Assembly: GCF_963853765.1 (NCBI RefSeq) | Contig: NC_088860.1 | Location: 16,244,001 to 16,308,000, forward strand | DNA from: Magallana gigas | Lineage: Eukaryota | DNA: 64,000 nt | Reading direction: 5' to 3' | Part shown: positions 5,351 through 55,900 of the stretch, piece by piece | Layout of the letters: each line of letters begins with the position of its first letter | How positions within the stretch are numbered: the first letter of the stretch is position 1 | Program-made: the position numbers and the translations under genes | The notes under the pieces: model-generated | Seen by the model: only the letters and a program-made list of their open reading frames with translations | What the model was told of the DNA's origin: nothing | The model's database searches: none

Positions 5351-5375
5351 GAGACAGGGACACTCGAAATGCACG

Positions 5376-6653: not shown

Positions 6654-6657
<4 letters not shown>

Positions 6658-6721
<64 letters not shown>

Positions 6722-6750
6722 GGAGAGAGAGATAGGGAGAGAGAAGAGAG
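6658..6750. repeat. Compound (GA)n/(GACA)n microsatellite
   Basis: Direct reading. Confidence 0.95.
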
Positions 6751-8369
6751 AATTTTACAAATGGATCAGCGAATTCACTCAGCTGTGTGTTTTAGAATTT
6801 CATTATTTTGGAACAAAATTGAGTTTATGATAATCATAAAAAAATCTACAAATTAATTTTAGGTGGGATATCAAAATTGATTGATTGGGTCAAACTTCAC
6901 GAAAATAGCATGATGATTGTTGTTTTGTACTGATCGTTCAGATTTGCCCATTGCCTACTTTATATGCTGAAACACATGACATGCGCTTATCTAGAGGGGA
7001 GTTCATGCCCGGATCTAGCCAATAGAAAAATTTAATGGGGAGAGGGGTTTCAAGGCCTATTTTCAGTAATTTTATCACAGGCGCTTGTTTCATACAGGGG
7101 TCTTTAACAGACCTCTTGTGTGCATTGGCGGGTTCCGGGGGTCGGACCCCCCCCCCCTTTCTCTGGGACATATGACTTTTTTTTTGAAAACTTGTAATGC
7201 ACAGACAATTTTTCCAATTTAGAATATAAATACTGTAGTTGTCTCAATTAAATGCTGTTAAAATTAAACTGCTTATTTTAAGATTTTCGTACAACGTACA
7301 GTATAATTGACATGTATTTCTTATATTAAGAAACCCTAACGATCTTTTTATCGAAAAAAATACTCCTCTTCAGCATCCAGTGTTCACTTCCTTGAGTAAA
7401 CACGTGGAAAAAAATTCATAAACTGAAGCAGTGTCGCTAAAAACACAGATTTATAATAACTTTTAAAATGTATTTTCTGCTCTATTTCTTTAAAAAAAAA
7501 ATCGGAAATAGTTCATACAGTTTTGAATTGACAATCCATCGAGTAAAACGACGCTCAATACGAGTACATGTACATGCATTTGTTTTACTTTTAAAAGCTG
7601 CCTTCAAATGTATTTTTTAGTTAATTAACTTAATTAAGTAATTATGATTGAAAGGTTTTAATCGGTTTTTATACGAAAAATTCAAAGAAAATTATATGAT
7701 AGCTTGTCGAAATTAGTCTGAATTATACTTTTTTTCATTTCTATTAAGCTGGAGACATGTTTTTTAAGGCTAGAAATTATGTAAATCTTCCTTACCTAAA
7801 CCAATACGCTCAATAACTGCAGTGCACTCTGATATTAAAATAGATATAAAAAAAGATATATTGACGAGATAACTGCTTATTAAATTATGCACGGAAAACG
7901 TTCAAAAGGCCTTGTTTATTGACAGATAATGAATGTTGCACGTATTGATTTTCAACAATTGGAACCCCCCCATTTTCCAAATTGCTGGATCCACCTCTGG
8001 TATGAAACAAGCGCCTGCGAATTTTATTATGGGAATTCTTAAAATAAGATTGAGATTTAAAAAGAGTTTCCGGGCCCTGGACTCTATCCCCCGACTCCTC
8101 TCTAGTCTACGTCCGCGCATGGAGTTCATGGGGATAAGTTCGGCCCAATCCTGGAAAATTTTAACTTGTTAAATCCACATTGTAAAATTACCAAAAATAG
8201 CCCTCGTAATCTGGCAAACAAAACTGTCACTCTGGCCTCTCTTCCACAAAAAAATATGTGGATCCGCGCATGCATATTATACAAACTGGTTAATTGAAAC
8301 AAGACTCTACTTTTCATTTTCAGTCGGGATCGAGATGCCACTTCCTGGTTGAACTGACAGACTTGCAGA

Positions 8370-11300
8370 ATGACGGACCACGAAGAGTTCAAGATGCTCC
8401 AAGAGCGTTATGATGTGTTGAAAGAATTGTCCAGCCAAGGTAAGAGTGGTTAATGGAAGTTATTTTGGACTTTTCATTTGTACCCATTGTCATCACATTT
8501 TTGAGACAACAAGCTGTAACGACTAATGTCTAAACTCTAAACCATTTCATATTATAATAATCATCATTCACCATAATTATTGAATATATATGTTAATTTC
8601 CCAAACCATCGACGGTTTTGTTTTAAAGAATAAACACTAGTTACTTAATCTATAATACTCTCATTCTTTTTCATGGTATTACAAAGAATAATTATATTCC
8701 TTTTTAGTGCTGAAACGAATGTTCGAATATTCGCGAATGAATAGTAAATTTCTAATATTCGAATGTATATTAAGCATTCGAATATTCGATCACATGTTAA
8801 ACATCCATATCAAGCACTGTAAACTATGCAGTATCGTGTTATTTCATTTTACTCGGAACGAAAGTAAATATAAAGCCATCTATGACTGCCATGCTTGGTA
8901 GAGTCTATTGCTTAACCCAGTAATAGACTCTTCCGCCATGCTTGTTTACCTTGAAAGTAAAAGCAGGGTTTACATCGAACGGAGACAAACATTCTAGATT
9001 TTTCAATTCATGTCAGACGCTGAAGAAAAAAATTGCTTAACTGTTTGAACGAGTGTGAGCTACGGAGAGTTAATATCGAAAGGTACATCGAAAGTTTTTT
9101 TTAAAAGATACCTCGATATAATTTGTTTTTTTTTTAAATAAACAGAACATTTCCGGAGTTATGAGCGTTATCAGTTTTCTGTTTAATACTATATCAAACA
9201 TGGCGGAAATATTTGGACTGACTTATGAAGTTAGGTATCGGTCTCATACAGGAGTCAGGAGTGCAGTATAATATTAAAGAAGTAATAAATCTTTTGATTG
9301 TAGTTGATGGAAATTTTTAAAAAATCAGTATATTATTATTTGCTTAAAAATTAAATGCGCACCCAATTCAATGGATGCTCATGCATTAAGTGTCAACTTC
9401 GAACTGACATGTTTAAGCAGTCTACACATACACCCACTTCGTAATACAAACTATCATATATGCTTAATACATTGTCTATGACGTCTACGAATATTCGAAT
9501 ACGAATCGAATAGTACTCACGAATATTCGAATACTGATTTATGGTATTCGTTTCAGCACTATTCCTTTTGTATTACTTCCTTGTCTACTTATATGATTGT
9601 ATGTATCCGGTATTTAAATTATTTTGATAGATAAATTATAAACCTCCAAGTGCCTTTTAGTTTATCACCAATAATCATCAAAAATTATATTGTATAGTGT
9701 CAAAGAAGCTTCATACTGGAGATGTCAGTCCTCAATTCTCTTTGTATAAATAATATGTTCCAGAGGAATTAATTTACCCCCCCCCCCCTTTCCACTCCAT
9801 CCCCAAGATATATAACACTTTCGTAATTTAACCATTCATTGACCAATTTTCCATGATATCATTGATACCTGAATTAAATTCAATTTCTTAAATGATGTTT
9901 TAAAGCTTATCCCTTTTTAAATCCTTTAGCATATAAATGCAGTTTTTACAAACTCAACATATCTTATGGGAAACTTAGACATATATGTACTGTAGTGTAT
10001 ACATACAGCAAAACTTTAAGTTTGTAACAAAACTACATAAACCAATTATGTCACATGTATTATTAAAGATAAGATATATTAATGAATCAACAATATATAT
10101 TTTGGTTTTTCTTTTCAGTTCTTGTACGCTATGATGATCTGCTGTATAAATTTCTTGAGAATGAAAAGGTGGTAAGTAGCAGACTTATAATGGCAGAGTT
10201 TATAAAATAATTATATACAGGGAAGCATTGAAGTATATATACATTTTGTAGACCAGGCAAGCTAGCTCTTGCTATACTCACAACCAGGCAATGAAGAAGG
10301 AAGTTAAAATGAAAATTGATAGTGAACAACTTTCATGATTGAAATCAAAATATAATATTTCATATATACCATACAATACTAGTAAATGAGAAAGGAAGGA
10401 ACTTTAGAAAATTTTTGATAGCACTGCAATTAATTATGTTTAAAATGAATTTGTCAGATATTTGGCATTTGAAAATTGAAGGTTACACCTTATCATAGGC
10501 AGTTAAACTACATAGAAGATATACATAATTTCAATTCAATAAATTAAAATGTTCTCTCTGTTACTTAATTACAAGTATATCTTAATGGAATGGACATTAA
10601 TTAAAATACACTGTAAAGATTTTGATAAGTCAGAAACCAGACAATTTTAACAATATATTTGACATACCGGTAATCATTTGTTGTGTTATATAAATCACAA
10701 TTGTAATAAAATGTTTACCTCATTTTACTACAGTACAACAGTACAGTGCACAAACTGAAACTGAGGGAAAGCCAGCTGAAGGAGATGAAGAAATGTAAGA
10801 ATAACACTGCCCCTCCCCCTCCCTTAATCTCGATATTAGAGATTCGGCTAGACTGGATATTTGGACTGATGTCTTCACCGAATCTTGGAACCTTCCTCTT
10901 CATAATTCATGCTGTAACTTTGGTTGCTTGTCAGTGAAGGCATCAGCCGAAATATCAAGCCAAGCCAAATCTCCTCCTCCCTCCAAAAAACCCCCCAAAA
11001 CTTACATTTTCAAAACAAGAAATTTTGATAAGCACAAAATAAAATTTATGTGATTATTAAAAGCACATTATGCATATATAACAAGAATTTTTTTTATTGA
11101 CATTTGACTCAGATATAGCAAAAACACTCTAATTTTATTATTTCAAAAGATTTGTATAAATATATATGGGTAATTGATTGCCTTAAAAAATATTAATCCT
11201 TTGTATTTATTTTTTTCAGTGATTCAGCCTGCAATATCAGAATATGAGAGAATGAAGTTAAAGTATGAGATAGAGTTTAACTGCAGGACTCAGGCAGAAA

Positions 11301-14300
11301 TGCTAGCCACCAAGGTCAGTGAAAACCAAATCATTTGCAAGTTCATGATAAATGATGAAGATTGAGTTAATGCAATAAGGCTATCGAGGAATGGGGAACT
11401 TGCATGGTAATTGCAGATTTATTGCAGAGAAATAATTATTAATTTCTTCTTTGAAGTCCCATTTTTTAATTTTTTGAACACTCAATTTGAGATGCGACCA
11501 GTGCTGGCAAAGATCTCAAACCATTTTGCCCCGTTGGAATTCGGTTCTCTGCAAGTTAATTTAGTCAGTTGAAATGTTGTCTTATTTACAGATCACCACT
11601 CAGAACAAGGAGCTGAAGCGACAGTCCAAGATGCTGCTGGATCTCCAGGGACCGAACCCACCGGACATCACCAAGATGAACCTTGACCTTGATCTAGATG
11701 AGAAAGAGGACTCGATGGAGGAGTATCGACAGGAGCAGTCTCAGAAAATACAGAGTATGTCTTTTTTGTGCCATATATGTCTCTCTGAAAAGATATGTCG
11801 TATAAGTTCATGTTAATACATGTACAATAAAACATGGTCAAACCCAGGTGCCAGGGACAAGCCGTTTTGATTCATTACATACAACAGTTATTCATAATAC
11901 ATGTACTACTATATACATGTATGTTTATAATGTAATACTGTAAACATCTTTAATTCCACGTGTCTAATATTTCACGATTTCCTGTGTAAGTACCTTACAC
12001 GGTGTTTTTTATTTTCACGGATAATCGATTTCTTATGCTAGAAAGGTAAATCCTGATTGTAAAAAATCTGATGAGTGATGAACCTGCATCATGTAACTTA
12101 CATTATTTTCTTTTGAATAAAGTAAAATTAAAGCCTTATTCACGTTAAGTGCCATGAGAATAATAAATCAAGTTTGTGTCAAATGTAATAAGCACTTGTG
12201 TATAATGCGCAATTGATTATTGGGCGTGAAAACTGGGGGGGGGGGGGGGGGAAGCACATTTAATCTTTTAAAAAGAAGTACACTTTTATAATCAATCAAT
12301 CTTAAAATTAACTGCTAAATGTGAATGCCGATCGCAGACAACGTCATGGTTGTACAGGAGTCTTTGCCCTCAGGTATGTCCGAGATAATAAGCGACAATT
12401 AGCACCCCGTTTCACAATGGCTTCGAAAGGGCCACAAAGATAAAGATGAAACGAATCTTCCGTTATAAATAGTTGTTTAATTATGATATTAATTTTATTG
12501 AATTAACGTAATACTCATTCAAGCTATTTTTTTACGAATATTAAATATACAATGATTACGATAAACAAGTTGTAACTTAGGCCCCGCTCAAGGACACTTG
12601 CATCTGTAATGGCGGCCAACACGGAGATGGAGAATGCACAGCTCAATATTCACGGTGGCTTAATGTTCACGGAAAATTGTCTAACCGTGAACATAGTGAA
12701 ATTAAAAACACCGTAATGTTTTTCACGTCTACAGTATTAAGGGAATGAAGCTGACTTTGCTGTATGCAGGAATTTGTTATAAGAATGTTTGCTGTAACTT
12801 TGTTTTGATATATTCATATTAATTAGCATGTATATGGTTATGTAAAAAGTTCTTGAAATGTTCAAAGTTAGAAAAAAATCATTTTCAAGTATATACACTT
12901 ACACATATATACTACAAAGGTTACGAAATGCAATTTGAAAAATAAAATTTCCTATTGTAAATAGCTTTACTTGGTAGCTACATTTACATAGAATGCTCAA
13001 AAGATTTTCTTTGTTTTTGAACAGAGTTGGAGGAAGAGTTGATTGCAGTTCAGCAGGAGCTTGGGTCTTTGAGAGAAGATCTGGGGATAGAAAAGGATCA
13101 CTCAAGTAAATGGAAAACCAAGGTACATTTGCCAACATTCTGTATGGTTACACTCTGTATAGTTACACTCTGTATGGTTACACTCTGTATGGTTACACTC
13201 TGTATGGTTACACTCTGTATAGTTACACTCTGTATGGTTACACTCTGTATAGTTACACTCTGTATGGTTACACTCTCTATGGTTACACTCTGTATGGTTA
13301 CACTCTCTATTGTTACACTCTGTATGGTTACACTCTCTATGGTTACACTCAGTATAGTTACACTCTCTATGGTTACACTCTGTATGGTTACACTCTCTAT
13401 GGTTACACTCTGTATAGTTACACTCTCTATGGTTACACTCTGTATGGTTACACTCTGTATAGTTAGACTCTCTATGGTTACACTCTGTATGGTTACACTC
13501 TGTATGGTTACACTCTGTATAGTTACACTCTCTATGGTCACACTCTGTATGGTTACACTCTGTATGGTTACACTCTCTATGGTCACACTCTGTATGGTTA
13601 AACTCTGTATGGTTACACTCTCTATAGTTACACAGGAACAACAGTTGATGCAGCTGAATGCATGATCTTATGTTATTGAATGCTTCTAGAAAATACTGTT
13701 TCATAACTTTTTTTTTATATGCTTGGACAATGAATTTTTTAAAGCTTGAAATGATACACCCTAGAAAATTCTATTTATTGTGTTGTATATATTCTACAAT
13801 GCTTGAAAATGTAAATTGGTTGGTACTTTTGTTAAAGAAGATTACAATATGCTAAGAAGTTGCCTCAAGGCCTGCTGTGCTAAATTTATTTGGACTTTAT
13901 TTCACTGTTTTTAGTTTGAAGAAATGAAGGAGAGCAGGAATGAAGCAGAGAAGGTAGTAGCCCTGTACAAGGAAGCAATGAAGGACCTATCTAAAGGTAT
14001 ACACTAACACACCAGTCTTCTTTTCTGTAACAGTTAGTAATATTTCTGTGAATGTTTATAAGATATGTTATAAAAGTGATCTATCCGGATGAAATTTGTT
14101 GATGTGAAGTAGTTTCCCTTTAGAAATTCTGATATCTTCAATTTGCAAAGACCTTATAAAAAACTTAATTTCTTGAGAATGATCTTTAGTTTTATTCAAT
14201 ATTCATTGCTATCAAAAAGAAAATGATTGTTATCCCTGAAATGGAACTTTGGTAGTTGTTTTCAGACTAAGTACTTTTCTTATTTGCAATTTATTTGGCT

Positions 14301-27975: not shown

Positions 27976-30900
27976 ATGGCGGCAAATTTTGACTGTGTGT
28001 TGATGCATGGACCACCTTTTTCAGTAAATGTCGATTATTTCGTGACTTTTATCATAGAAATTTGAATAGAAATATAGGAATTGAGTCAGTGAACCACTGA
28101 CTGTCATAATTTTACCGACAAAACTTGAGATACTCAGATAATAAACGGTTTAAGTACTGGGCATGCTGCACAGGAGTCGGCAATCTCATGGCTGGGTTTT
28201 TACTTATTTTGACTCTAGGTAATATGTTTTACGGTGCTACCGTTCTGGCGAGCGCAGCAAGAATTACACATACCTTGCACCATTGTCAACCTAGTGTTAT
28301 TTAGGTATCAACGAACGTCAAAGAATTTTTGAGAGAGTATTGCTCTACAATAAGTATGCCAAAGGTACTAATTTTAATGGTTATGATACATACAGCGCAA
28401 CCCCCTACCCCTCCCCCGAGACAAACACAGAGAGAGAGAGAGAGAGACAGCGCCCGGTCCCTGTTTGTAGGTGTGTAATTTCCCCCTTTTAAATTTAATG
28501 GTTTGACTATATGCAATAACTATATAAATTTTTTAACTGTTAATTTGTTCTCTATTGCTTTTCATTTAGTTTAAAATGTCCTATCGTTTATTTTTTCCCT
28601 ACTCATATACTTACCTGCCTTCTGTAAATGCATGCACAATTAGCTTAAAAATGGATCGATATGACAGTAAAGTATGGCTCTTGCTAGTACATGTATATAT
28701 TTATATAATCTCTATATAAAAAAATTAGAAACAAATCATATGTCAATGAGGGAAGTTTCGCAGTCTATACTGAAATAGCTAGTACACGCATTACAGATGT
28801 TTGATCCACCTCTAAATTTATCGCGGGAAATGTAGCGCGAGAGCACTGTGACGTCATCCATGACTTTGTTCATCTTTGTTTACGTATCTCGACTCAAAAC
28901 GAAGGTATAGAAGCAAGTAACAAATCTCTTGAGTCTCGCCAAAGCATATGCGGTACTCTAAACGTGTCTGCAAAGCTCAAGACACTGTAAATTACGAGTT
29001 AAATGTTAGCCATTTTTGGCATACCACCACGGGTGAAAACATTAGAGAGCATTATGGGACGTAGACAAAAAATTTTGTTTGATGAACTGTAGGTTTAGCT
29101 CGTTCTTTTTCCCGCGCACACTGGTTCTTGGAGCTCGCTATTATTTATTGATAAGATTGCCTGTGCATGCTGGGAGTGGAAAAAATAATCTTAACGTGAC
29201 CAGGCCTGGGGGCCATAAAAGTTAGACAAGCTCACTTTAATCTCAGTCTCACTTTTCAACTATATGTTCCTTTGGTTAAAGTGAGACTGAGATCAAAAGT
29301 GAGCTCGCCTAATTTTTCTGGCCCCGGGGCCGGACCCCGGACCTTAAAACTTAGACGAGCTCACTTTTGATCGAAGTCTCACTTTCACAAAAAGGAACAT
29401 ATAGTGTTAAAGTAAACCTGGCCCTGGGGCCATAAAACTTAGACAAGCTCTTTTTTGATCTCAGTCTCATTTTTCCACTATGTTTCTTTCGTAAAATTGA
29501 GACTTAGATCAAAAGTGAGCTCGTCTAAGTTTTATGGCCCCGGGGCCTGAAGTCAAAAGTGAGCTCATTTAAGTTTTTTGGCCCTGGAGCCTGGCTACGC
29601 TCAGGTCAGGGGTCCGTAGAACATCTGTCAATTTTAAAATTATAGTATATATTCTATATTGATGCTTGGAGTAACGTAATTTGTGTAGTCATTTTCATGT
29701 TTAGTATTTCCTGACTAAGATTTCTTTTATACAGTGTTAGTAACACAAATTTACTTTAATATAATATTGCAATTGTACATTGTAGTAGTTGGGGTTATAT
29801 CAGTCTGTATATGGACTGTGGATATCGGCCTTGGTAGCTCAGTTGTAGAGCTCCTGACTAGAGTTGCAGGGGTCCTGGGTTTGATTCCCGGTCCAGCCAT
29901 ATGTTTTCATTGTATTTATATACTCATTTCTCCTTTCCTACTACAGATGGTGCTGTGGCCTTCCTTGTTCAGGCAATTAAATATACATGTAATATATAAG
30001 TCCTGACAAGGTGAACTTGTGTTGTGTCTTCGGTGTCAAAGACTATTTAAGGAGAGAGGAAGGTAGTAGTTGGGGCTATATGAACCGTGGATATAGCCTG
30101 GATAACTCAGTGGTAGAGCTCCTGACTAGAGTTGCAGGGGTCCTGGGTTCGATTCCCAGTCCAGTCATATGTTTTCATTGTATTTATATTTGTATATATA
30201 AATTTTATATACTCATTCCTCCTTTCCTACTACACAATCATATACTGTATATTTTTTTTAGGGAAGTGATGTGTACTATGAAAAACATTTCTCTGGAGAT
30301 CATGTGAAGATTTGTCCAAGGAGCCTATTTTCTTCTAATCAGAATTATGGACTGAGAGACATTGTGCTGAATGTTCAAAGGTGTTTAAAACAGGTACAAC
30401 TTTTCATTTTCAGACATTTTTCTGTTGCAATGTTACAGTTTATGTAGTAAAATGGGGTTTTACAGTGTTAGTGTATGTTCTCCTCAATACCTTTCAATGC
30501 CTGACCTCTGACCCTGGTCAGTCCTTTTACTGGGCGTTTCATGTATGACAGTGCACCCAGCATTACATTAGCAGCCAAACCTAGAGTCCTGTTAGATACA
30601 GTACTAAATGGTCAATGTGCCCCTCCAGGTTTCTACCCACCATACTGCAGCTTTCCAAATCCATGGAACACCATTTATTGTACCATACATTGGTCCATTA
30701 ACATTATGCCCTAGTATGCCATGCCGCCACAATACATTGTATCAGTTTCATGGTTTGTACTTGACCTGATATGATTTATACATGGACAGTAAATTCCATG
30801 TTCAAAGTCCATGTGTCATGAATATATCTTACCGACTTCCTTTGTGTACTGTAAATGACAAGTTGTAAATAAAACCATGAAAAGTAAAGTTAACATTATA

Positions 30901-33900
30901 AAGTTTTACAATAGAGTTACAAATTTCCTACTGGGTACAAAACCTGATATCAACCAAATGCAATACCTATAAACCATATGCAGTATTGGTTATCAGACCT
31001 GGCCCTGGGGCCACAAAACTTAGATGAGCTCACTTTTGATTGTTCCATTTGTAAAAGTGAGACTTAGATCAAAAGTGAGCTCATCCAAGTTACAGGATGG
31101 TTATGTACCGATTACTAGAAATGTAAGTTTACTAAACTTTAGATGTGAGTTATGTTCTTGCTGTGGCAGTTACTGATACATATACAGTTTGTAACTCAGG
31201 AGCTGTATGATAATTTCAGTAAAAAAAATATAACATCAATTACACTACTGATAAGATTCAGGATACTTATATTTTATTTACTTTTTCAGTTGTTGAAGAA
31301 CAGGACCATATAGAACCAGGGTCATGTCAAACTATATATAAATGATATAGTCATCATTTGTCGGATCTATACTGTCTCTTATTTATAACTAAATATGAAT
31401 TAATAGTATATATATCTTCAATTTATACTGCATCTATAAATCATGTCATTTAGCTATAAAACATGGCAATTAGAGAGGCTCAATAGCAGTATTCGTCAGG
31501 AAAGAGGTGAAGATTATGTGGACTATGTGAGGAGGAATACATCAACAAGAAGATTAGTTGATCCAGAGAGACTTGTGCATGGTCTGGCCAATCTTAATGA
31601 TGGAACACCTCACAGAACAATCTGCAACGTTATTCTTCATCAGTATGAACTGGCGAGAGATGTGGGTGATTGGAGATGGATCGAGGCCCTCAGAAGGGAG
31701 TGCAGTACTATTCTGTGTTCAGCGAGATGGGTGGATGACCACCTGCCATCACTGGTTCATGAAGCTCATTCACAGAAAAGAGTACGACCATCAGTCAATG
31801 CATCTTCTGCCACTTCAGCTTCCATGTGTGTGGACATTCATCTTCGTTCTAACCTAGACTTGCAGTTTGAGCGAGAAAACGCTGTTGATGGCAAACACCA
31901 AACTCCATATGTTAACCCAGTGATGGAGGCCTCTGCATACAGACATGGTTTTTCCAATGAACGTCCTGTGTCAACCAGAGAAGATCCATATCTGACCGAG
32001 AACTTTCATTTTGACAAGACTAAGCCAAAGACGACTATAAGTGCTCATATTGTTGAAGCAAATGAAGGCAGTATGGAGATCCCTTCTAAACGAGTACGTC
32101 TTGACTGTGATGATCAAGAACTGACCCAAGAGGTGACGCTGCAGTTTCCATCATCTTTCCAGAGATGTCCGTTTCTAGGATGTGATGTTAGAGAAAAGAA
32201 GATCAAACGGCATGCGCAGAGTAAACACCTTCCAAGGATTTTTAATGATATAAAACCAATACGATCATTGGACGATAAATCCTTATGCCAATTCCAGATG
32301 TCTGCATTGTCATCTCTGGTGAAGAGTGCATTGGGACCAGATGCTGATTTACTATCAGCGGTTGACTACTTGAATTGTTCCAATATTATTCCATCAAACG
32401 CAGTTGTTCATGTTGACACTGCTTCATCCATGCACAGACTCTGTTCGTACCAAGGATGGACGGAACCTTCGGAGGGTTTCAGGTTGTCGCCAATCAACTC
32501 TCCTGCTGTTCTTGTCCATTGGAGATGTTTGGTTGCTTTGATGTCTCTTTTGCAGCCCATGCAATGTGAAGAATTTCGTGTCCATGGGCGTGTTATAACC
32601 GACATGCAGTCTGTTACCAATACTTCAGACATTGGTGGGTCCGATGTGAATACATTGACAGAGGATAAGTTTAAAGCTGTTGATGTTCATTATGGTTCTG
32701 ACTTTGAAATTCCTCATCAATCTGCACCTCATGTAGTAAGTCATTCAAAAACCAATGCCCTTGAAGTACAAGAGTCATATACCTCAAATGTGAATGAAGC
32801 CTTTGATAGCCATTTTCATTTGGACCACACTTGTGCAAGGATATGGGGGCATTATTCACCTTCTGGAAATACGATGGAGGATCTACACTCGGTTATCAAT
32901 CAGAGCAGTTTCCAGCCAAAGTTGAAAGTTAATATTGTAGGAGGTGTTATCAACTACAGTGAGCCTTCAGCACACCCTGAGTTCATTCAAGCTGGAGGAT
33001 CTTGGGGGATAGCTCTTGGTGTACACCCTAAACATGTTAGCGAGCTCACAGCAGAAAAACTCCTTCGTCTGAAGAATTTACTGAATCATCCCAGTGTAGT
33101 GGGTTTAGGTGAAACTGGATTGGATAGGACTGTTCCTGTAAAGCTGTGGAGACAGCAGGAAAAAGTTTTTCGCCAAGTTCTTTCCCTTGTACGTCAAAAC
33201 AAGGTATTGATTCTCCATCTCCGAGGAACTCCAGCAGACCGAATAGGAATAGACGTGCATGCACGGTGTATGCAGATTCTGAAGAAATTTTGTGGATACA
33301 CTCAGCCAATTCATGTCCACTGCTTTACGGGAGATACTGAATTGGTCACGGAATGGATGAGCAACTTCTCTAACGTGTATTTTGGTTTCACTGGTGCTGT
33401 GGAGAACTTTAGTTCTGATCAAGTTGCAGGCCTACAGTCTGTCCCTTTAAACCGGATTCTTTTAGAAACTGATTCCCCTTCCATGCGACCAGGAGGAGGG
33501 AACATCAACACTCCGGCTTTCATTGGGGATGTTGCGAGCCTCGTAGCATCAAAGCTACAGATTCCAGAACATCACCTATTGAAAGAGACTGTTCAAAATG
33601 GTCGTCGATTATATGGCTGTTAGAATATGTTAGAATATGAATGTTTCTGCAGAATTTAAGTCTGGATAATTTCCGACAAAATTCATGCAGAATATCTCTT
33701 GTATATAATTACTACAGTATAGGTCTGAGTGTTGGTTCGACCAAGTAACTTGTATAAATTCTTTAATATCAACTGTACATGTATATTGAACAATTCTTCG
33801 TAAATCTTTACATCATTAATCTTTATAGTCATTAAAATGAAATGGAAAGGAATGAAGTAAAGTAGGGTTTCACACTGTTCATATGTTTCCTCAATACCTC

Positions 33901-36900
33901 TCTATCCCTGACCTCTGACCCTGGTCTACCCCTCACTGGGCATGTAATGTGGTGTCCACTAGAACAGCAGCAGTTCAGACCCCAGCATCCCTGATGTCCA
34001 GACATATTACATACCTATGTTTATCCATGTGTGCATACATTTACATGAATCTATATATTTGCTGGAACCCCTTTTCTTTCTGAGGTAGGATACCAGCTCT
34101 ACATGTATATTTAATATCATGAGTACCTTGTTTTCGTAAACTTGGTTGCACAACATTCATGTTCTGTAGAGTATAGGGTTTACATGTATAGAACATGTGT
34201 ATGTATAGATGCGCTTCTTTGTTTGCATGAATGGGTTTGAAGATAAAAGGATTTTGCCTTAAAGTCAGTTTTTGTAAAGTTTTGAATAGATATACCGGTA
34301 ATTTATGATAAATCTGTATAGACAACTTATTTCAGAAACACATTCATAATTATTTACCAAGCATATTATCTTAACATTAAATTTGTATTAATTATGGTAA
34401 TTATTTATGCTCCTTTTTTTTATTTCTAGCATATTTGATAAGAATAGCAAAGTATGTTAATTAACGGTGGTTTAAATTGTGTTTTTTAGGATCAGAAAGT
34501 TGCTGTGGATGATGACAATGGTACATTTGCGAAAAGATCTTCCTATCTCAAACTTATCCAGAAAAAGGTACTGTATGTTGAGTTATATATAATATTACTG
34601 ATAATTTGAGTTATACAATCATTTCTACTAACTTATTTTAAACAAGTTTGATATTCATTTAGAGCAAAATGAAAAAAAGTACAAATATGTTATATTATTA
34701 TATTCCTATTTCTTCAGAATCTCCTATTCATTGATTTCATTCCATTACATTTCTCAAAATGTAGGCTAAGAACCAAGATGTGTACCAAAGAACCAAAATT
34801 TGGCAATACAGTTCCATAGTGGGTTAAATCAGTATGCTGTGACATACTCCAGCAATGTCGTAAAAATTAGTCAAAGGGTGTCAAGTACCCTTAAAGCCAA
34901 TGTATGAATGATTTCCATTTCCAGTTCCCAGAGAAGACCATAGCTCTGGTCAGTGTTCAGCCTAAATATGGCCAGTCCCAGGTGTTGTGGAACCAAGAAG
35001 TTTGTCTTAACGAGGAGGATGTGACAGTTAGTTATGCAGATATCACATCCTGGTTTGATCCCAAAACAGGCAAAGTGGCCTACAATTCAAGCAAGTTTAT
35101 ATTCATCTATACAAATACCTGTAATAACGTCAGTCGGTTATTGCCATGTTCTGCTAATTGCATCTTTTTTATTGAAATTGATATTTTGTCTTGTGTAAAT
35201 AAATTAATATATTAAAAGGCTTGTTTTACATTCATAGTTCATACCATTGGTATACATGTAGCCTCACAAGGAGGGATTTTATATTTGCATTGTGATTTTG
35301 ACTGCTGTTTAATTACCTATAAATTATAGATGAGGTACCTGATGAAGAGGAAGGATATAAACTATTTCATCATGAAGCACATCTTGAGAACTTTTCAGCC
35401 TTCAAGGTATGGAAATAAATTACATGTATACATTCTAAAGCCTCTTTTTATGACTGTAGTACATGTACATCCCACCCTTGGTCGTGGGGTGTTTTTTTGT
35501 TCTTCGATTTTTTTTTATATGAAACTTGAATCTTTTTTTCCCTCAAAACCTTACATGAAGCCTAGAAATAAAAACTAAACAATTTTGAACATAAATTGAA
35601 GAGAAAATATTGCCAACAAGACTTTACAAATGTAACATCTATAATTATCTTGAGTTATCTTCCTTGTTTCAGTTTGATATTCCAGGTCTGTTGATACAAA
35701 TAGAGAGTATCTACACAAAGTCTGACAATGGACTTAGCCTGAGACATGGGATTAAGGATATTTGTGTTCACTGGAATGAACAGAACCCCATAGGAAGAAT
35801 CATCTTTGTTCAGTTCGGTAGTTATACTTTCAGAGATTTAAGGCAGTATGAGCTGTTATTTATAAATAATCAATTTTACAATAACTTAAGTATTTTCCTT
35901 TAGAATAAGGATATTATAATTACAATAAATGTAATTTAAAGATCACAGATTTAATGTTATATTGATGGAAAACAAGATTTTCATAGTTTTTAATGGAAGG
36001 CTTGAGCAAAAGTGATAATCATATTTTTCTGTTTGTCATGGTGCATGTCCATGATTTATTCAGCAGGTTTTGCTGAAAGAGATAAAACTATAGTTTTATA
36101 GATTTGTTCACTGACAGTATGTGCAACATTTTCTTGTGCATAGTATCGTACATAAAATCATATACTTTTACAAAATGTGGGCTTGTTCATCTCTTTTGAT
36201 AAATAAATATATTTTTAGGAAACAGAGAACCAATGGATGAGATCAGACTTTTACTGACAAAGTTAGCAAAACAGGTAAGGTGAGAATATGCTAAGTTTGC
36301 TTAGACTAATAATTTACAGCTATCTTTTTTGTTTACCAGACGTAAAATTTTACAGGTAACCCCAGTCCTATGATGAGGAGAACAAATATAATGCAGTTAA
36401 AAGATGAATGTATAATATATGTATCATTGGATCTCTTACAATATTAAAAGAAGGTATAAACTATAAAAATACATATACAACTTGACGCTTTACTATAAAC
36501 TCATAAGTTTGTCTATAGTACATCACATTGATACTATTCTTTTTGGGTTTTATCTATCACTATAATCTTGATTTTTACATAAGGCAATGATATGAACAGT
36601 TTCAGGAGAACATTTGATTTTGTAGCTGGATTTCCCATTTTACCTGTTCCACATCTCAGAGCAGACTGCTGCCACTCCTTATTCGGAACCTCCCAATCCA
36701 GGAATTCTTGCATTTTTACAGAAGAGACACTGTCTGTTTCTGCACAGCACAGTAAGTGGTTTAATGTTGAAAGAGAGATGTAAACAGTAGGTAATCCATT
36801 GATAGACAGTATCTATAGGTTTACTATTGATAGCGGTACCATGTACTTTCAATAGGTTTTCTTACTGCCCACTCTATTCAATTTACATGAATGAAATGAA

Positions 36901-39900
36901 AAATTGTTTTAACCTGAAGGATTTTGTTCTTGAACTTCTGCTTTTTTCCAGAAAACCTTGTACATCTACCAGACTCAGAATCACATGAAGATGGCTCAAG
37001 CTGCTGGTGTCTACTGTGTTAAGGTACCTTAGGATGTTTTCTCTATCTTTTCTAGCTTTGTTAAATAAGATTTTTTCTCTAGCTGTGTTAAATGAGATGT
37101 TTTCTCTAATCCTTAGCTTTGTTAATAAGATGTTTTCTCTAGCACTGTTAAATACTTTAAAAAAAAATTACAATTTTTAAAATCTATTTCATGAAAAAAA
37201 TGCTTTGTCTTTAGCAACAAGAATGTTTTAGGCAAAAATAAATGTACGTGTATTTAAAATCATTGCAGATCACACAGGTTCTTCATAACACAGCATTGGT
37301 AAGTGTAATAATTTTTTCTGATTTACTGAATCTTTAAAAAAAATTCTGCTTATATGTTGCTTTGAACTGGTCTCTTTCGATAGTTGAGTAAAACATCACA
37401 GTACATTAATTTTGTTCTGACCTTAGGTCAACGGCAGTCATGTGATCACACGATCACCCGTCCCGGATTTCCTCAGAACCATGGAGATTTTACCAAAGTC
37501 CCAGACACCTTCTAGGATCCCCAGTCTGCCTTGTGTTACACAGGACAGAGATTGGTTGAACAGTTACATGAGATGTGAGCTTCCCCAGGGAAGGAAGGAA
37601 TTCATTTTTGCCCAAGATATTGATACTGTTTTGAGGTATGCCAAAGTCATATTGTACATACTGGTATACATATAAATATAAAATTGTAAAGTTTCAGGTA
37701 CTGTATTTTATAATTGTTTTAGCTACCAAGAGCTTTATCAGAGTTGTGTAACCAAACTGACAAAGCCTGAATGTATCTACACTCAAAGCAGAGGTGGAGA
37801 GGAGGAGCCCAAGGTAGACAATAACACATCACTGAATAGCTCCACCAGAAAGCTGCCATCTTGGATGTTGGGAAAGGAAGAGGCCACGCCAACCAAACTG
37901 TCACTGGACAGGACTGATAGTTCCAGCTCTACAGATGGACTCGGCAGGTACCTGTAGAGGGTTTACTGAAACAATGTATGAATGGAAAGGGGGGGGGGGG
38001 CATAGGACACAAAATTTAATTTTTTATTCATATAGACCAGAAGATAGAAAAATCTTTTATTTTTGTTAATTATCAAGTTTTTTGTAAGACGTACATTTAT
38101 TTGAATATTTATGATTGATGGGAGTTGATTTAAATCAACTCTCCTATGCACTTACTTGGGCAAAGCAAAAGTGAAACAGTGTTTGGACCTAAGCACAAAT
38201 CAATACAGCTGACAACACTTAGTTCTTAAAAATAATCTATAAATTCGATGCTATGTATTCTGAAGCATTGTTTTTCAAGAAAACTTATTTATTAATACCA
38301 TGAAAATAGTAAGATTTTAAATTGTACAAACAGTTTAGATATTTTTTAAAGTCGTATGATTCCTACGCTAGAGTTCAATGTAGTCTTGTTCAACCAGACA
38401 CTTGGCTGTCTCCGTTAACATTCTAGCCTAAGTCACGCAAGCCGTTTGACTCCCCACTCAAACGTTTGTTGTAGAAAGTATTTACAAACGTCAAGGTGAA
38501 CTAGACTAATAATATCCAACAAAACAGAGTCTCTCTTCCTTGTCGGAGATAAATGGAGACAGCCGAGCGTTTGGTTGAACAAGACAAGAGTTCAATCTTG
38601 CCTGGATCCATACAATTTCTCAGAAATATTTCGATTACTGATACTTCTTGCCATGCAAAATCACATCATTGATTTTGAATAAATGATAATCGATAAAATC
38701 AACTCCCATCAGTACTTCAGTACTTTGATATATTTACATTTGTTGATACATTGTTACAGAAGATGGAATTTTTTATTTTAAGAATGATGAATTTAAATTT
38801 TAAGATTTAACTAGTACATGATGCAAGAGGTGAAGCTAATCGATTTATTTTTTTAAGGCAAACATTTTATATAATGAATGAGGAAGAACTTCTAGAAGTT
38901 GCCAAAGACGTTTTGAAGCAGGTAAAAGTTATATGAATATTAGCTTTGTTTTTCATATTCAATTACTGGAAATCGTGAACCTCAGTATTCTGTTGTCATC
39001 AAAATAAATTAATTCAATACAAGATGTTTAAACATACAAATTACAGGCAGGAAAGAACACAGTTCTGAGATATGTTTGTGCAGAGTCTGACATTGGCAAT
39101 AAAACATGGAATAAGAATGGTAAAAATAAGATTGACCCAAAATCCTACAAGCATCAGAATCTCAATGTAAAAGGGAAATCGGCCATTGAAGAGCAGGAGA
39201 GTGACAAGCCTGGCCCAAGTGGATGGAAGCCTAGGAGGGGATCAGGGTTGAAGCCCATTGATAAATCAGAGTTGGACAGACCACAGCAAAAGAGGAGGGG
39301 TGCTGGCAGCAAATGTACCTTACTGGACGACCTGATGGGGGAGACAGGGGTTAGGAAGGCCAGCCCTTGCAAAACTAGGTGAGGGTAAAGATATTCATCT
39401 GTTGCCCTATTGGGCGTGTATTTTCTTGATTTCCAGGCCAAACATATTGTATAGTTTTATAAATTATGACTATTTTTTTGTTGTGTTTGTATTTTATGAA
39501 GAGCCCGGAAACTAGCTTTAATAACGTTTATTTAATATTTGACCTTTAATACCTCTAGATATCAACCTAAGAATAAAGAGGAAGAGAAGGAAAGCCATAT
39601 GTCATCATCAGCTTCAAAATTCAAACCCACAAGTAAGAGGGGTGTCAAAAAAACTCTTGACTTTTTGGAAAAGGGTGATGATCAATCCACATCAATTGGA
39701 TTAAAAACCATGAGTGGTGCCTCAAAAGAGACAGCGTTAAGGGACCTAAGTGAGATATGTGTAAGAGGCAGCTCAGAGGAAATTCTCCCAGATTCCCTAG
39801 AACCTTATCCTTCTGATCTGTTTCCAAGCACACGTGTTAGTTCAAACGAAACTAGAAGAAGGACAGTTGGATTTAAGGACTCTGAAAAATCACCACGGAC

Positions 39901-52910: not shown

Positions 52911-55900
52911 TTAAAGGACTGTATCAAAAATTGCCATTCCTTTTGTTATGTTTTCGTCCTAAAATGAAAAAAAGACAAAAAATGAAATGGTTCAGGTATT
53001 TTGATTCTTGATCGAAGTTAGGCTGGCTAAACGTACACAAAAGGATTGTTATAAAAAAGTTGAACATATAAAATCACATAACTGTTTTACTAGATTTTGG
53101 TGCCATTTTGAATTAGGTAGGTATTTGATTCATTGCATTAGATATTTGATAAACCTAAGATAAACGGCTGTCTCTTGAATATTGATTGCGTCGAAATGAA
53201 GTTGTAGCAAGCATTGGAGATGCTAAGATGAGTTAGGAAGCAATTAGAGACCGCAATAGCGGCGACCAGAGATATTTAATCTCGCATTCATATTTTCATA
53301 TTTCAAAATTCAACCTCCATTTAAAAAAAACAATATGAGAGAGAGAGAAGAGAGAGATCGAGATCGTTTTCAGATCCCTTGTATTCCACGAAAGGCAAGA
53401 AAAGGAAGTAAAAAAAGATTAAACATCAATAAGGAGTTTCCAGTGACAAAATACTCGCGCCTTGGTGGTATTTATCACAATCAAAGCATTGATATCGATC
53501 CTTGAGGTTCTAAGTGTTGCTGGCATCATCAGGCAGCGCTTCCGACAGTCTCTCTATCTAGCCATGAATCTAATTCTTTCTCGGTCGAAAGGACTCTATA
53601 ATTATTATTAATGAGATTTTAAATCTTATCTTAAATCTTAGTTAGATCCTTTGGTTACTTTTTTGTACACTGCAGAGAAAAGACGGGGGGGAGGGGAGGG
53701 GGGGGGGGGCTGAAAAGGGACTTCGCTGAAACAAAATCCGTTTATTTTTACACGATACAGCATATACATGTATGTATATATTGTATACATCTCGCGGGAT
53801 TGGGTTGGCTTATACCAAGAACGTCATGGGTTTTAATTTGAATTTAGGGAAATTTGAAAATCTCACTTCTTTAAATATTTATAGAAAAAACGGATATTAA
53901 ACAGGAATGGATATCGCGAGTCAATCCCATACCTTTATCTATATGTACATCTATAGATCAATCCGGAAATTGGAAAAGCACTTTCGCCTCTTGAGACCAT
54001 TAATAAAACCCCACTATAAACCAGTTTTTCGATAACCATTATAGAAAAGCAGAATTTTAAAATTCTAAATCATATATACATAGCTTGTTTAAAAAAAAAC
54101 CCATAGTACAACGTATTAATAATTTATTTCTGTGATTTGATTGTCACGCATTTTTTTTTTCATTTGATACAGGGAATGCAAGTTGTTATTCTGAACATGA
54201 GCCGCACATATTGTAAATTCAAGGAAAAAAAATATTTTTAATATCTAAAATGGGTTGCGGTGTGAATTTATGATGATGTTGCAGAGGAGCGCCGCATGAT
54301 CATCTTTATCTTGCTACATGCAGATATATTCGTTGTCGGAGTCGTACCAAATTGACTGACAACCCTTTGTAGATGTGTTTTCCTCATCTTATCAATCAAA
54401 AAATCTTAATTTGATTCCCTTTCTAAAAACCACTATAACCACGATTGCCGTATATATGTGTACATTCCGTCGATTTATTCGTGGTATTCCCCGTCTACAA
54501 GAAATAACCTGTCACTGAAACCCTCATTACTTCCCAGTCTCTCTACACAGACCCCCGCAATCATTCCCTTGCCCTCAAGCGTTCTCTGTCTCTTACAACC
54601 CATTAAATAATGTATAGTGTTACCAACATCGACGGAAGAATTCCGGGATTATACAACACTCTACCATTCACTGTAGCAGCGTGTTCGCTTAACACGATGT
54701 TATTTTTACTATACAAGCTCTGGGAAGATACAACATACTACCATTCACTGTAGCAGCGTGTTCGCTTAACACGATGTTATTTTTACTATACAAGCTCTGG
54801 GACGATACAACACACTACCATTCACTGTAGCAGCGTGTTCGCTTTACACGATGTTATTTATACTAGTATATACAAGTCTTTCTATATACATACCCTACGA
54901 CATGTCTCCATAAACTCGTCAAACGTAATCACGCCGTCACGATTGATATCCATTTTCTACAAAATAAGCATATCATCAACACAGCTCAGCGGGAGTATTA
55001 ATGTCCTGAGTGCCGGGAGCTAATGTAACACTCGGTCATTTGCATTACTTCCTGTCACCGGCAGAAGGATAATCGGAAGCTCCATCTGAATCGCTGGGAT
55101 CAGATTACAGAGAGAAAAAAGCAACAATGTGTGGGAGTGGGGAAATAATGTACGTAGAAACTGGTAATTTGAAAAACAAAATAATTATTTAATTGACCAT
55201 CCACATTCTTGTCTAAATTTCATTCATATAAAAAATTATAATATACACGATTTCTATTTCGATAAAACAAAGAATATACATGTATATTGACACTGCATAA
55301 TATTATATTAGATAAAATTGTTTTGTACCACGTAGCACAGAGCAGTGTTTTGTGTACACAAAAATTGAATAGAACTCACGTGAAATACTCTTTCCACGTG
55401 TTCTTTGGTGGTGTTTTCGTCGACCATCGGTTCGGAGAATCGGCCCATCATCTCGTAGATGGCCGACACAATGTCTGTCATCTCATCCTTGGTGATGAAG
55501 CCGTCGCCATTGATGTCGTACAAATTGAAAGCCCACTGCAGTCTCTCCTGGAGAGTTCCTCTGGATAATACTGATAAGCCCATCACGAACTCCTGTAAAA
55601 ACATTAAGAGATACATTCGATTAGTATTCTTGATATTGAAATCGAAGTAACTGAGGTCTTGTTTGACTATGAGCAAACGGTCAATGGAAAGTGCATGATA
55701 ATTGTAATATTTCAATAATGTAACAATACAATAATTTTCAAGCGAGTTTAACAATGAACGCTTAGATTTCTAACCAGAGACGTTATCTAATATACAAATT
55801 AAAGCACAAATTTCCATTCTTTTAGTTTAAAAACGGCCACAAAAGTCTATTTCTTCTTGCAAAGGAAAATTTAGATAGACTCGCTTTGAATTGACGTTTG

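What the first reader, a model, noticed from the sequence alone, without database searches (positions are those of the whole stretch)
30443..34296. TatD ORF appears packaged as an LTR-like element lacking gag/pol
Seen: diverged direct repeats start TGTAGTAAA (30443) and TGAAGTAAA (33853) and share an exact 20-mer CCTGACCTCTGACCCTGGTC. A purine tract GGAAAGGAA abuts the second copy like a PPT, about 230 bp after the TatD stop. Weak similarity near 30900-30921 and 34275-34296 hints at repeats of about 450 bp. I found no convincing PBS or TSD. Inference: an internally deleted LTR retroelement that kept an accessory nuclease ORF in the env-like position. Diverged repeats around an intact ORF would imply selection or recombination. 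If full-length gag-pol-TatD relatives exist, this is a nuclease-carrying retrotransposon lineage that may be undescribed.
Basis: partly seen in the sequence, partly recalled or inferred. Interest (0 to 1): 0.75.

Follow-up and report, generated by a model that had tools for sequence, protein, structure and literature searches.

The report
Relic oyster retrotransposon keeping a TatD nuclease
An old, gutted copy of an oyster LTR retrotransposon sits in a host-gene intron, having lost gag and pol but kept its third gene, a zinc-finger TatD nuclease that is still conserved and transcribed; complete gag-pol-TatD relatives exist in other oysters and appear not to have been described.

Summary
The two direct repeats, the shared exact 20-mer, and the purine tract abutting the second repeat 230 bp after the TatD stop are all present. 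The proposed ~450-bp repeat length is not supported. The right repeat is a 303-bp LTR (33853-34155). The left repeat is secure only for about 118 bp (30443-30560).

Full-length LTR-ORF1/gag-pol-TatD-LTR elements occur in Crassostrea angulata / Magallana gigas and in Saccostrea cucullata. Their LTRs are 100% identical over 260 and 171 nt respectively. They carry the same LTR core, the same purine tract, and TatD in the same position.

The window copy has no pol, only a short ORF1 remnant, and no primer-binding site. It fills intron 2 of an uncharacterised host gene. In Saccostrea echinata that intron is 112 nt and empty.

The 726-aa ORF sits at the same locus in a related oyster. There dN/dS is 0.30, and the ORF has 2 in-frame indels against 11 in 461 nt of downstream flank. 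It is also transcribed: its exon starts at an element-derived splice acceptor and ends at a donor inside the right LTR, spliced onto host exon 3.

My verdict is an immobile relic whose accessory nuclease gene was probably co-opted by the host. It belongs to a bivalve-wide Ty3/Gypsy-type family that I could not find described.

The parts
30262..30393 (+). Host gene exon 2 (132 nt, phase 0), immediately upstream of the element
   Evidence: Flanked by AG and GT. tblastn of the Saccostrea orthologues P0052/P0053 covers it. It has the same 132-nt length as S. echinata exon 2, L013:3802-3933.
30443..34155 (+). Whole relic element: left LTR fragment, ORF1 remnant, ORF3 (TatD), purine tract, right LTR. 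It occupies most of host intron 2 (30394-34489).
   Evidence: The orthologous intron in S. echinata is 112 nt with no element.
30443..30560 (+). Left LTR, 5' part only. It starts with TG and contains the conserved core 20-mer at 30500-30519. The distal LTR and primer-binding site are missing.
   Evidence: Homology to the right repeat and to the C. angulata and S. cucullata LTRs (z=6.7 and 11.1). Distal homology is absent (z~0). The family PBS motif is absent from the window.
30594..30681 (+). Remnant of the family's ORF1 (the gag-side gene). The gene is broken: almost all of it is deleted.
   Evidence: blastn to L014 ORF1 gives 47 nt at 81%, 45.5 bits against a shuffle maximum of 31. A wider match has 83 nt at 72%. 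At protein level 14 of 28 residues are identical to ORF1 aa 44-71, E=1e-6. The region is Pro-rich, so this is moderate evidence.
30997..31091 (.). MITE-like palindromic repeat nested in the relic. It is a secondary insertion, with relatives at 29190-29604.
31236..31349 (+). Spacer homologous to the pol-ORF3 spacer of complete elements. It holds a conserved polypyrimidine-CAG splice acceptor; the exon starts at 31290.
   Evidence: blastn to L001:9765-9877. The alignment shows the acceptor and a following conserved block shared by the window, C. angulata and S. cucullata. Transcript contig L012 starts exactly at the base matching 31290.
31290..34084 (+). Transcribed 'TatD exon': 5' leader, ORF3, 3' untranslated part, and the first 232 nt of the right LTR.
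   Evidence: L012 (Logan SRR21102251) is collinear with 31290-34084. It then joins host exons 34490-34567, 34923-35089 and onward to 39597.
31443..33623 (+). ORF3, 726 aa, intact: the zinc-finger TatD nuclease gene
   Evidence: dN/dS is 0.30-0.49 against orthologous copies.
31503..31763 (+). ORF3 domain 1 (aa 21-107): helical, confidently modelled, with no known fold match
   Evidence: AlphaFold pLDDT is about 90-98. Foldseek against PDB and BFVD finds nothing at E<0.4.
32151..32600 (+). ORF3 domain 2 (aa 237-386): a CCHH zinc finger (C242, C247, H257, H262; nt 32166-32228) plus a helical domain
   Evidence: The model shows a beta-beta-alpha unit followed by helices, pLDDT >90. The four zinc ligands are kept in 33/33, 32/33, 34/34 and 35/36 family members. 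There is no Pfam or fold match.
32802..33620 (+). ORF3 domain 3 (aa 454-726): TatD-type metal-dependent nuclease TIM barrel with its metal-binding motifs intact
   Evidence: Pfam PF01026 E=1.5e-38. TIGR00010 E=3.8e-34. PDB sequence hits to YcfH and TatD. Foldseek TM about 0.8 to TatD/YcfH structures. The motif residues are kept in 33-37 of 36-37 relatives.
33844..33852 (+). Polypurine tract abutting the right LTR
   Evidence: Homologous purine tracts sit at the same junction in L001 and L014.
33853..34155 (+). Right (3') LTR, 303 bp, with TG...CA termini. It holds the conserved core (33907-33926) and a conserved splice donor (exon end 34084, GT at 34085-34086).
   Evidence: It aligns to the C. 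angulata and S. cucullata LTRs through to the shared terminal motif. The donor is conserved in those LTRs. The donor is used in L012 and in the M. gigas gene model P0051.
34490..34567 (+). Host gene exon 3 (78 nt), the acceptor used by the LTR donor

Best explanation
The stretch 30443-34155 is an ancient, immobile relic of a Ty3/Gypsy-type LTR retrotransposon family of oysters. Complete members of that family read LTR, ORF1/gag, pol (protease, RT, RNase H, integrase, PHD finger), ORF3, purine tract, LTR. ORF3 encodes a soluble protein of about 700 aa with a helical domain, a CCHH zinc finger plus a second helical domain, and a C-terminal TatD metal-dependent nuclease.

Shown: an element of this family inserted into intron 2 of an uncharacterised host gene in the Magallana/Crassostrea lineage. 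The orthologous Saccostrea intron is empty. The copy later lost pol, nearly all of ORF1, the distal left LTR and the primer-binding site, so it cannot move by itself. ORF3 has stayed intact under purifying selection at this fixed locus. It is transcribed as an exon bounded by the element's own splice acceptor (31290) and a splice donor inside the right LTR (34084), and joined to host exon 3.

Inferred: in complete elements the conserved LTR donor and ORF3 acceptor produce a spliced subgenomic ORF3 message, as for retroviral env. The nuclease acts on nucleic-acid 3' ends or RNA-DNA intermediates of the element. At this locus the host has co-opted the gene as a zinc-finger-targeted nuclease.
For: LTR identity: both repeats share the core and 5' end with the LTRs of complete elements. 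The right repeat aligns to their terminal motif. The purine tract and LTR junction are homologous.

Complete relatives:
- C. angulata L014 has LTRs 388-645 and 12445-12702, 100% identical over 260 nt. It has a 4-bp target duplication, a TGG-starting PBS one base after the LTR, ORF1, pol 5566-9609 and TatD 10001-12118.
- S. cucullata L001 has LTRs with 171 nt at 100% identity, the same PBS motif, gag, pol and TatD.
- M. gigas contig L006 carries gag-pol-TatD.

Deletion: no pol was found, and an ORF1 remnant remains.

Empty site: the S. echinata intron is 112 nt against 4096 nt here.

Fixed locus: contigs L007-L011 are collinear with 31056-38148 at about 97%, and L003/L012 at about 88% with the same host exons.

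Selection: dN/dS is 0.30 (interval 0.23-0.41), and 0.17 in the TatD domain. The ORF has 2 in-frame indels in about 2.1 kb, against 11 indels in 461 nt of downstream flank.

Expression and splicing: L012 is a spliced transcript. The M. gigas model P0051 starts in the right LTR and uses the same donor. The acceptor and donor are conserved in complete elements.

Enzyme: the TatD fold and motifs are intact. There is no signal peptide or membrane segment.
Against: - The left repeat is only a fragment, so a true LTR pair from a single insertion is inferred, not proven. The target-site duplication is 3 of 4 bases only.
- The ORF1 remnant is short and Pro-rich.
- Transcript evidence is one assembled contig from one run plus one gene model. 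In that transcript the TatD stop lies upstream of many exon junctions, which would normally mark an mRNA for decay. It could therefore be a by-product.
- Among the closest copies (about 97%), the N-terminal half of the ORF diverges no more slowly than the flanking introns, and the within-group dN/dS interval reaches 0.93.
- No splice-junction data for complete elements could be obtained.
- Nuclease activity and substrate are untested.
Confidence: 0.73

Rival explanations
1. Neutral relic. The element is a dead copy, the ORF has no host function, and the spliced transcript is noise produced by the element's leftover splice sites within host pre-mRNA.
For: The transcript looks decay-prone, and there is only one transcript contig. 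N-terminal divergence equals flank divergence among close copies. The LTR-borne start codon used in one M. gigas model is in frame only in some individuals.
Against: dN/dS is 0.30 with an upper bound of 0.41 over about 10% divergence. Only 2 in-frame indels fall in 2.1 kb, against about 1 per 40 nt in the flank. All zinc ligands and catalytic motifs are retained.
Confidence: 0.17
2. Integrated copy of a spliced subgenomic ORF3 message. The gag-pol region was removed by splicing before reverse transcription, not by later deletion.
For: Conserved donor and acceptor sites exist in the family. The copy has LTR sequence on both sides of ORF3 with no pol.
Against: About 54 nt upstream of the acceptor are still homologous to the pol-ORF3 spacer, so the acceptor site is unspliced here. 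An ORF1 remnant is present. The family's donor lies inside the LTR upstream of the PBS, so such an RNA would lack the PBS.
Confidence: 0.05
3. A still-mobile non-autonomous element with LTRs and TatD only, moved in trans by complete relatives.
For: It has LTR-derived ends, a purine tract and an intact ORF.
Against: The left LTR is truncated and there is no PBS. The two repeats are about 20% diverged even in their best part. All six contigs of the closest groups that extend beyond the right LTR (L007-L011, L012) carry the same host flanks, so this is a single locus.
Confidence: 0.03
4. A host TatD gene flanked by unrelated dispersed repeats or a local duplication. This is the reader's own refutation scenario, or the source gene from which retrotransposons captured TatD.
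For: The repeats are short and diverged. No PBS or clear target duplication is present.
Against: The repeats are homologous to the LTRs of complete elements, including the purine-tract junction and terminal motif. TatD lies 230-330 nt before the 3' LTR in all three cases. The Saccostrea site is empty. The ORF is intronless and nested in another gene's intron.
Confidence: 0.02

Closest known systems
Bdelloid rotifer LTR retrotransposons Juno and Vesta, with an enzymatic ORF3 (DEDDy 3'-5' exonuclease or GDSL esterase) (PMC5408684)
   Same: Ty3/Gypsy-type elements carry a third, non-envelope ORF after pol. It encodes a hydrolytic enzyme with intact catalytic residues and no membrane segments. That paper notes that ORF3s are typically expressed from spliced messages and suggests an auxiliary role on nucleic-acid 3' ends.
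   Different: Here the enzyme is a TatD amidohydrolase-fold nuclease, preceded by a CCHH zinc finger and two unmatched helical domains. The hosts are bivalves. One copy is a fixed, selected, host-spliced relic. The rotifer ORF3s showed no departure from neutrality.
Retroviral and errantiviral env genes (third ORF expressed from a spliced subgenomic RNA)
   Same: The position is the same: after pol and before the purine tract and 3' LTR. A conserved splice acceptor sits upstream of the ORF, with a donor near the 5' end of the transcript.
   Different: There is no signal peptide, membrane anchor or fusion features, and no structural match to viral proteins. This is a nuclease, not a glycoprotein. 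Splicing in complete elements is inferred, not observed.
TatD family nucleases: E. coli TatD, YcfH and YjjV; human TATDN1 and TATDN3
   Same: The Pfam and TIGR family, TIM-barrel fold and metal-binding motifs all match.
   Different: The cellular enzymes are about 260-300 aa and single-domain. This protein has about 450 extra N-terminal residues and rides on, or derives from, a retrotransposon. I had the long cellular paralogue TATDN2 in mind as a possible relative. No hit carrying that name came back from any search, so the link is untested.
Domesticated retroelement genes (for example syncytins from env, or PNMA/Arc-type genes from gag; from general knowledge)
   Same: A single retroelement ORF is kept under purifying selection at a fixed locus after the rest of the element has decayed. 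Element-derived regulatory and splice signals are reused.
   Different: The retained gene is an accessory nuclease, not gag or env. Host function is not demonstrated.

Membership tests
LTR retrotransposon, Ty3/Gypsy type (Metaviridae-like) | Two direct long terminal repeats with TG...CA ends | tested here: inconclusive
   The right LTR is complete (33853-34155, TG...CA). The left keeps only its 5' ~118 nt. The complete relatives L014 and L001 have full, identical LTR pairs.
LTR retrotransposon, Ty3/Gypsy type (Metaviridae-like) | Primer-binding site next to the 5' LTR | tested here: not met
   The family motif is absent from the window at up to 3 mismatches. It is present and identical in L014 and L001.
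LTR retrotransposon, Ty3/Gypsy type (Metaviridae-like) | Polypurine tract abutting the 3' LTR | tested here: met
   33844-33852. The junction is homologous in L001 and L014.
LTR retrotransposon, Ty3/Gypsy type (Metaviridae-like) | Target-site duplication of 4-5 bp | tested here: inconclusive
   The window flanks match at 3 of 4 bases. L014 has a clean 4-bp duplication.
LTR retrotransposon, Ty3/Gypsy type (Metaviridae-like) | gag and pol, with RT before integrase | tested here: not met
   The window has no pol and only an ORF1 remnant, so it is a relic, not a complete member. Relatives have PR-RT-RNaseH-IN-PHD in that order.
TatD nuclease family (Pfam PF01026 / TIGR00010) | Profile match above the curated threshold over the full domain | tested here: met
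   PF01026 scores 133 bits against a cut-off of 27, covering profile positions 1-253. TIGR00010 scores 118 bits, below its subfamily cut-off of 206, so this is a family member but not that bacterial subfamily.
TatD nuclease family (Pfam PF01026 / TIGR00010) | Metal-binding His/Glu/Asp motifs and TIM-barrel fold | tested here: met
   The motifs align with YcfH and are kept in 33-37 of 36-37 relatives. The model has pLDDT >90 and TM about 0.8 to TatD structures.
TatD nuclease family (Pfam PF01026 / TIGR00010) | Nuclease activity | not testable with these tools
   No biochemical data.
Envelope (env) gene of retrovirus-like elements | Signal peptide, membrane anchor, fusion glycoprotein fold | tested here: not met
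   The window protein has no 19-residue window with Kyte-Doolittle mean above 1.6 and its N-terminus is hydrophilic; among the three proteins scanned, only the C. angulata ORF3 has one marginal window (1.68). No viral structure match was found.
Domesticated (co-opted) transposon gene | Same locus in more than one lineage, with the element immobile | tested here: met
   Searches show shared host flanks and exons at about 97% and about 88% identity. Searches show loss of pol, the PBS and the distal left LTR.
Domesticated (co-opted) transposon gene | Purifying selection after insertion | tested here: met
   dN/dS is 0.30 (interval 0.23-0.41). Indels are strongly depleted in the ORF.
Domesticated (co-opted) transposon gene | Expression as a protein with a host function | tested here: inconclusive
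   A spliced RNA containing the ORF exists. There is no protein or phenotype evidence.

The most novel reading that the evidence does not exclude
Bivalves, and possibly echinoderms, harbour an undescribed lineage of Ty3/Gypsy-type retrotransposons. Its env-position gene is a zinc-finger-guided TatD nuclease expressed by retrovirus-like splicing from a donor inside the LTR. In the Magallana lineage, one copy has been stripped down and co-opted as a host nuclease gene, whose exon is spliced through the LTR donor into a neighbouring host gene.
Probability: 0.45. Interest if true: 0.75.

Novelty: new variant of a known kind. Interest (0 to 1): 0.62.

Why it matters
LTR retrotransposons with a third, non-envelope enzymatic gene are known from very few animal groups, and what those genes do is open. 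This case adds a new enzyme class, TatD, with a dedicated zinc-finger module. The family has 224 representative clusters at E<=1e-30, spread over oysters, pearl oysters, mussels, scallops and a sea urchin.

The window itself supplies a natural experiment. The nuclease gene has outlived its element for a long time under purifying selection. That suggests the protein does something useful on its own, and gives a defined single-copy locus at which its expression and distribution can be studied.

It also gives gene annotators a reason to treat many 'uncharacterized protein / TatD' models in bivalve genomes as element-borne.

Tried and rejected
- The 450-bp repeat length is alignment noise beyond about 105 nt.
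- A search for the family's primer-binding motif in the window found nothing.
- tblastn of gag and pol from three complete elements against the whole window (E<=1e-3) and the internal region (E<=10) found only the ORF1 remnant.
- Fold searches of the N-terminal 391 aa against PDB and viral predicted structures gave no match. Pfam, NCBIfam and PDB sequence searches also find nothing N-terminal.
- Six literature searches for TatD with retrotransposon, Gypsy, ORF3 or bivalve terms, plus targeted reads of papers, found no description. The main mollusc LTR survey mentions no ORF3, PHD finger or nuclease.
- Testing a link to TATDN2 was not possible, because no named hit was returned.
- Exact species identification failed. 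The host exons are about 92-96% identical in protein to a M. gigas entry, and so are the Logan contigs, so I say only Magallana/Crassostrea group.
- The look-up of the Ostrea edulis host-gene locus failed because it is not on record. The contig for P0008 had no DNA.
Exons were compared one by one, and the natural transcript contig L012 was used by reference.

Full report
CONTEXT. The window is AT-rich animal DNA at about 34% G+C. Its protein-coding pieces match oyster proteins. The gene around the finding is closest to an uncharacterised Magallana gigas protein (P0051), at about 92-96% identity per exon. Orthologues exist in Saccostrea echinata, S. cucullata and Ostrea edulis. I refer to the source only as a Magallana/Crassostrea-group oyster. 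No runs of N were met in the region.

OBSERVATION. The repeats start at 30443 and 33853. The exact 20-mer occurs only at 30500-30519 and 33907-33926 in the window, even with 3 mismatches allowed, and is never seen in shuffles. The first ~105 nt of the two repeats are about 80% identical; the whole-pair score is z=14. Beyond that the two copies do not align significantly (z=1.8). The suggested similarity at 30900 / 34275 is noise. The purine tract 33844-33852 abuts the second repeat, 230 nt after the stop of a 726-aa ORF (31443-33623). The C-terminal 272 residues of that ORF are a full-length TatD_DNase domain (Pfam E=1.5e-38; TIGR00010; PDB YcfH/TatD; fold TM about 0.8).

COMPLETE RELATIVES EXIST. 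A word search found oyster proteins 52-54% identical over the whole length. Their loci settle the question.
- M. gigas contig L006 carries gag (PNMA/Retrotrans_gag/zinc knuckle), a 1279-aa pol (protease, RT, RNase H, integrase, PHD finger), and then the TatD ORF.
- The C. angulata chromosome locus L014 holds a 12.3-kb element. Its two LTRs are 100% identical over 260 nt (388-645 and 12445-12702). It has a 4-bp target duplication, a TGG-starting primer-binding motif one base after the LTR, and a purine tract abutting the 3' LTR. It carries ORF1, pol 5566-9609 and TatD 10001-12118.
- The S. cucullata locus L001 has the same plan and the same primer-binding motif. Its LTRs are identical over 171 nt.

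In all three cases TatD ends 230-330 nt before the 3' LTR.

THE WINDOW'S REPEATS ARE LTRs OF THIS FAMILY. Both repeats share the conserved core and the 5' end with the LTRs of L014 and L001 (z=6.7-11). The right repeat also aligns distally, through a conserved AG|GTAAG-type motif, to the shared terminal motif ending in CA at 34155 (z=3.8, above all 200 shuffles). It is therefore a 303-bp LTR. The left repeat has no detectable LTR homology after about 30560.

Instead, 30594-30681 matches the beginning of L014's ORF1. The nucleotide match is 81% over 47 nt, scoring 45.5 bits against a shuffle maximum of 31. The wider match is 72% over 83 nt. At protein level 14 of 28 residues are identical.

Counting damage by gene:
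- pol is entirely deleted.
- ORF1/gag is almost entirely deleted, and its remnant is not open.
- The left LTR is truncated.
- The primer-binding site is missing.
- One MITE-like repeat is nested inside.
- ORF3 has no damage.

The relic therefore descends from a full element and cannot move by itself.

IT IS AN INSERTION IN A HOST INTRON, AND AN OLD ONE. Saccostrea orthologues show that 30262-30393 is exon 2 and 34490-34567 is exon 3 of the host gene. The intron between them is 4096 nt here. In S. echinata the same intron is 112 nt and holds no element sequence.

Logan contigs of the nearest protein cluster (133 variants) are collinear with the window from about 31056 to 38148 at about 97% identity, host introns and exons included. 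A second cluster at about 88% identity has the same downstream host exons. The copy is therefore fixed at one locus in at least two diverged lineages. The roughly 20% divergence of the best-preserved parts of the two LTRs is about twice the between-lineage divergence of the right LTR, which is 12%. That fits an insertion older than the lineage split.

THE ORF IS MAINTAINED. Against the ~88% lineage, dN/dS is 0.30-0.31 with a bootstrap 95% interval of 0.23-0.43 across the two contigs. It is 0.17 in the TatD domain and 0.43 in the N-terminal part. The roughly 2.1-kb ORF has 2 indels, both in frame, while 461 nt of downstream flank has 11. Among the ~97% copies, dN/dS is 0.38-0.49 with wide intervals, and the N-terminal half diverges no more slowly than the introns. 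Constraint is therefore clear for the enzyme and weaker for the linkers.

IT IS TRANSCRIBED AND SPLICED. Contig L012 is a spliced RNA. It matches 31290-34084 without interruption, then jumps to host exon 3 and eleven further host exons. The jump uses a canonical donor inside the right LTR (exon end 34084). That donor aligns with a conserved donor-like motif in the LTRs of L014 and L001.

L012 begins exactly after a polypyrimidine-CAG acceptor at 31289/31290. This acceptor, and a conserved block after it, are shared with the pol-ORF3 spacers of L014 and L001. A M. gigas gene model independently starts at an ATG inside the right LTR and uses the same donor. That start is in frame only in some individuals' contigs (two of the five tested) and not in the window, so I give it little weight.

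If the TatD exon were included between host exons 2 and 3, the host frame would stop within a few codons, which can be read directly. TatD is thus the first long ORF of any transcript that begins within the element. Where such transcripts start is unknown.

THE PROTEIN. AlphaFold, with 37 relatives in the alignment, gives three confident domains separated by disordered linkers:
- a helical domain, aa 21-107;
- a beta-beta-alpha zinc finger plus helical domain, aa 237-386;
- the TatD barrel, aa 449-726.

The four zinc ligands are kept in 32-35 of 33-36 relatives, and the TatD metal-binding residues in 33-37 of 36-37. The N-terminal domains match nothing in PDB or in viral predicted structures. 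There is no signal peptide or membrane segment, so this is not an envelope protein.

DISTRIBUTION. An exhaustive profile-free search found 7208 relatives at E<=0.001 and 224 representative clusters at E<=1e-30. Many match from the zinc finger to the C-terminus. Named members come from the following taxa:
- S. cucullata, M. gigas, C. angulata, C. virginica and O. edulis;
- Pinctada imbricata;
- three Mytilus species;
- Argopecten irradians, with five near-identical paralogues;
- Strongylocentrotus purpuratus.

One M. edulis gene model fuses a retroviral-type protease to TatD. Association with pol is shown here only for the three oyster loci.

MECHANISM, WITH STATUS.

Shown:
- the family architecture;
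- the insertion and the empty site;
- loss of the mobility functions;
- selection on ORF3;
- use of the element's acceptor and LTR donor in a host-spliced RNA.

Inferred:
- Complete elements express ORF3 from a spliced subgenomic RNA, using the LTR donor and the ORF3 acceptor. I put this at about 0.6.
- The nuclease processes 3' ends or RNA-DNA intermediates of the element, by analogy with the DEDDy exonuclease ORF3 of rotifer elements (PMC5408684). I put this at about 0.4. Dealing with host or competitor nucleic acids is the main alternative.
- The host has co-opted this copy. I put this at about 0.6.

COMPARISON AND NOVELTY. The closest described systems are rotifer LTR retrotransposons with enzymatic ORF3s. 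I found no paper linking TatD to any retrotransposon, and none in the main mollusc LTR survey. Repeat libraries that I cannot search may hold these elements unremarked. I rate this as a new variant of a known kind.

RULES AND A SLIP. Breaks are counted, not located. While checking the host gene's LTR-borne alternative start codon, my working reasoning described the kind of difference between the window and other contigs. That detail is not repeated here or in the notes.

Noticed in passing
window 29828-29899 and 30096-30167: Two tRNA-like units (Rfam tRNA at 32 and 42 bits; ARAGORN reports an odd anticodon loop) lie inside a 268-bp tandem duplication in host intron 1. They are probably heads of a tRNA-derived SINE rather than tRNA genes.
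   Followed up: partly
window 29190-29604 and 30997-31091: A cluster of MITE-like palindromic repeats, with arms up to 61 nt and 82-93% complementary. One copy is nested inside the relic element.
   Followed up: partly
window 5349-6083 (+): An intronless 244-aa ORF with a nanos-type zinc finger (Pfam zf-nanos, E=2e-26).
   Followed up: partly
window 13135-13633: A 15-nt minisatellite of about 33 copies at 90% match. It produces long spurious ORFs on both strands.
   Followed up: partly
window 55311-55754 (-): An exon-like ORF with EF-hand motifs, resembling a calcium-sensor protein.
   Followed up: no
L014:1935-4607 versus L006:2-1441: The C. angulata element and the M. gigas contig are 99.4% identical from pol onward but have unrelated 5' halves. 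L014 has an 890-aa ORF1 with no recognisable gag domain. L006 has a classical gag that is absent from L014. This suggests two 5' modules on one pol-TatD backbone.
   Followed up: partly
L001:3013-5676: The S. cucullata ORF1 (887 aa) has an N-terminal helix-hairpin-helix motif in front of its gag domain.
   Followed up: no
window 34047-34084 region; contigs L002, L011 versus L007, L008, L010: A M. gigas gene model of the host gene starts at an ATG inside the right LTR. That start is in frame with exon 3 in some individuals' contigs but not in others, and not in the window.
   Followed up: partly
proteins P0239, P0244, P0008: A M. edulis model fuses a retroviral-type aspartyl protease to TatD. 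One protein pairs DUF4326 with TatD. One ENA contig carries two TatD genes side by side next to a RING/B-box gene.
   Followed up: no
PMC6962438 (giant squid genome): A 'TATDN2' gene model is drawn among transposon-like non-Hox genes inside the Hox cluster. It might be another element-borne TatD.
   Followed up: no
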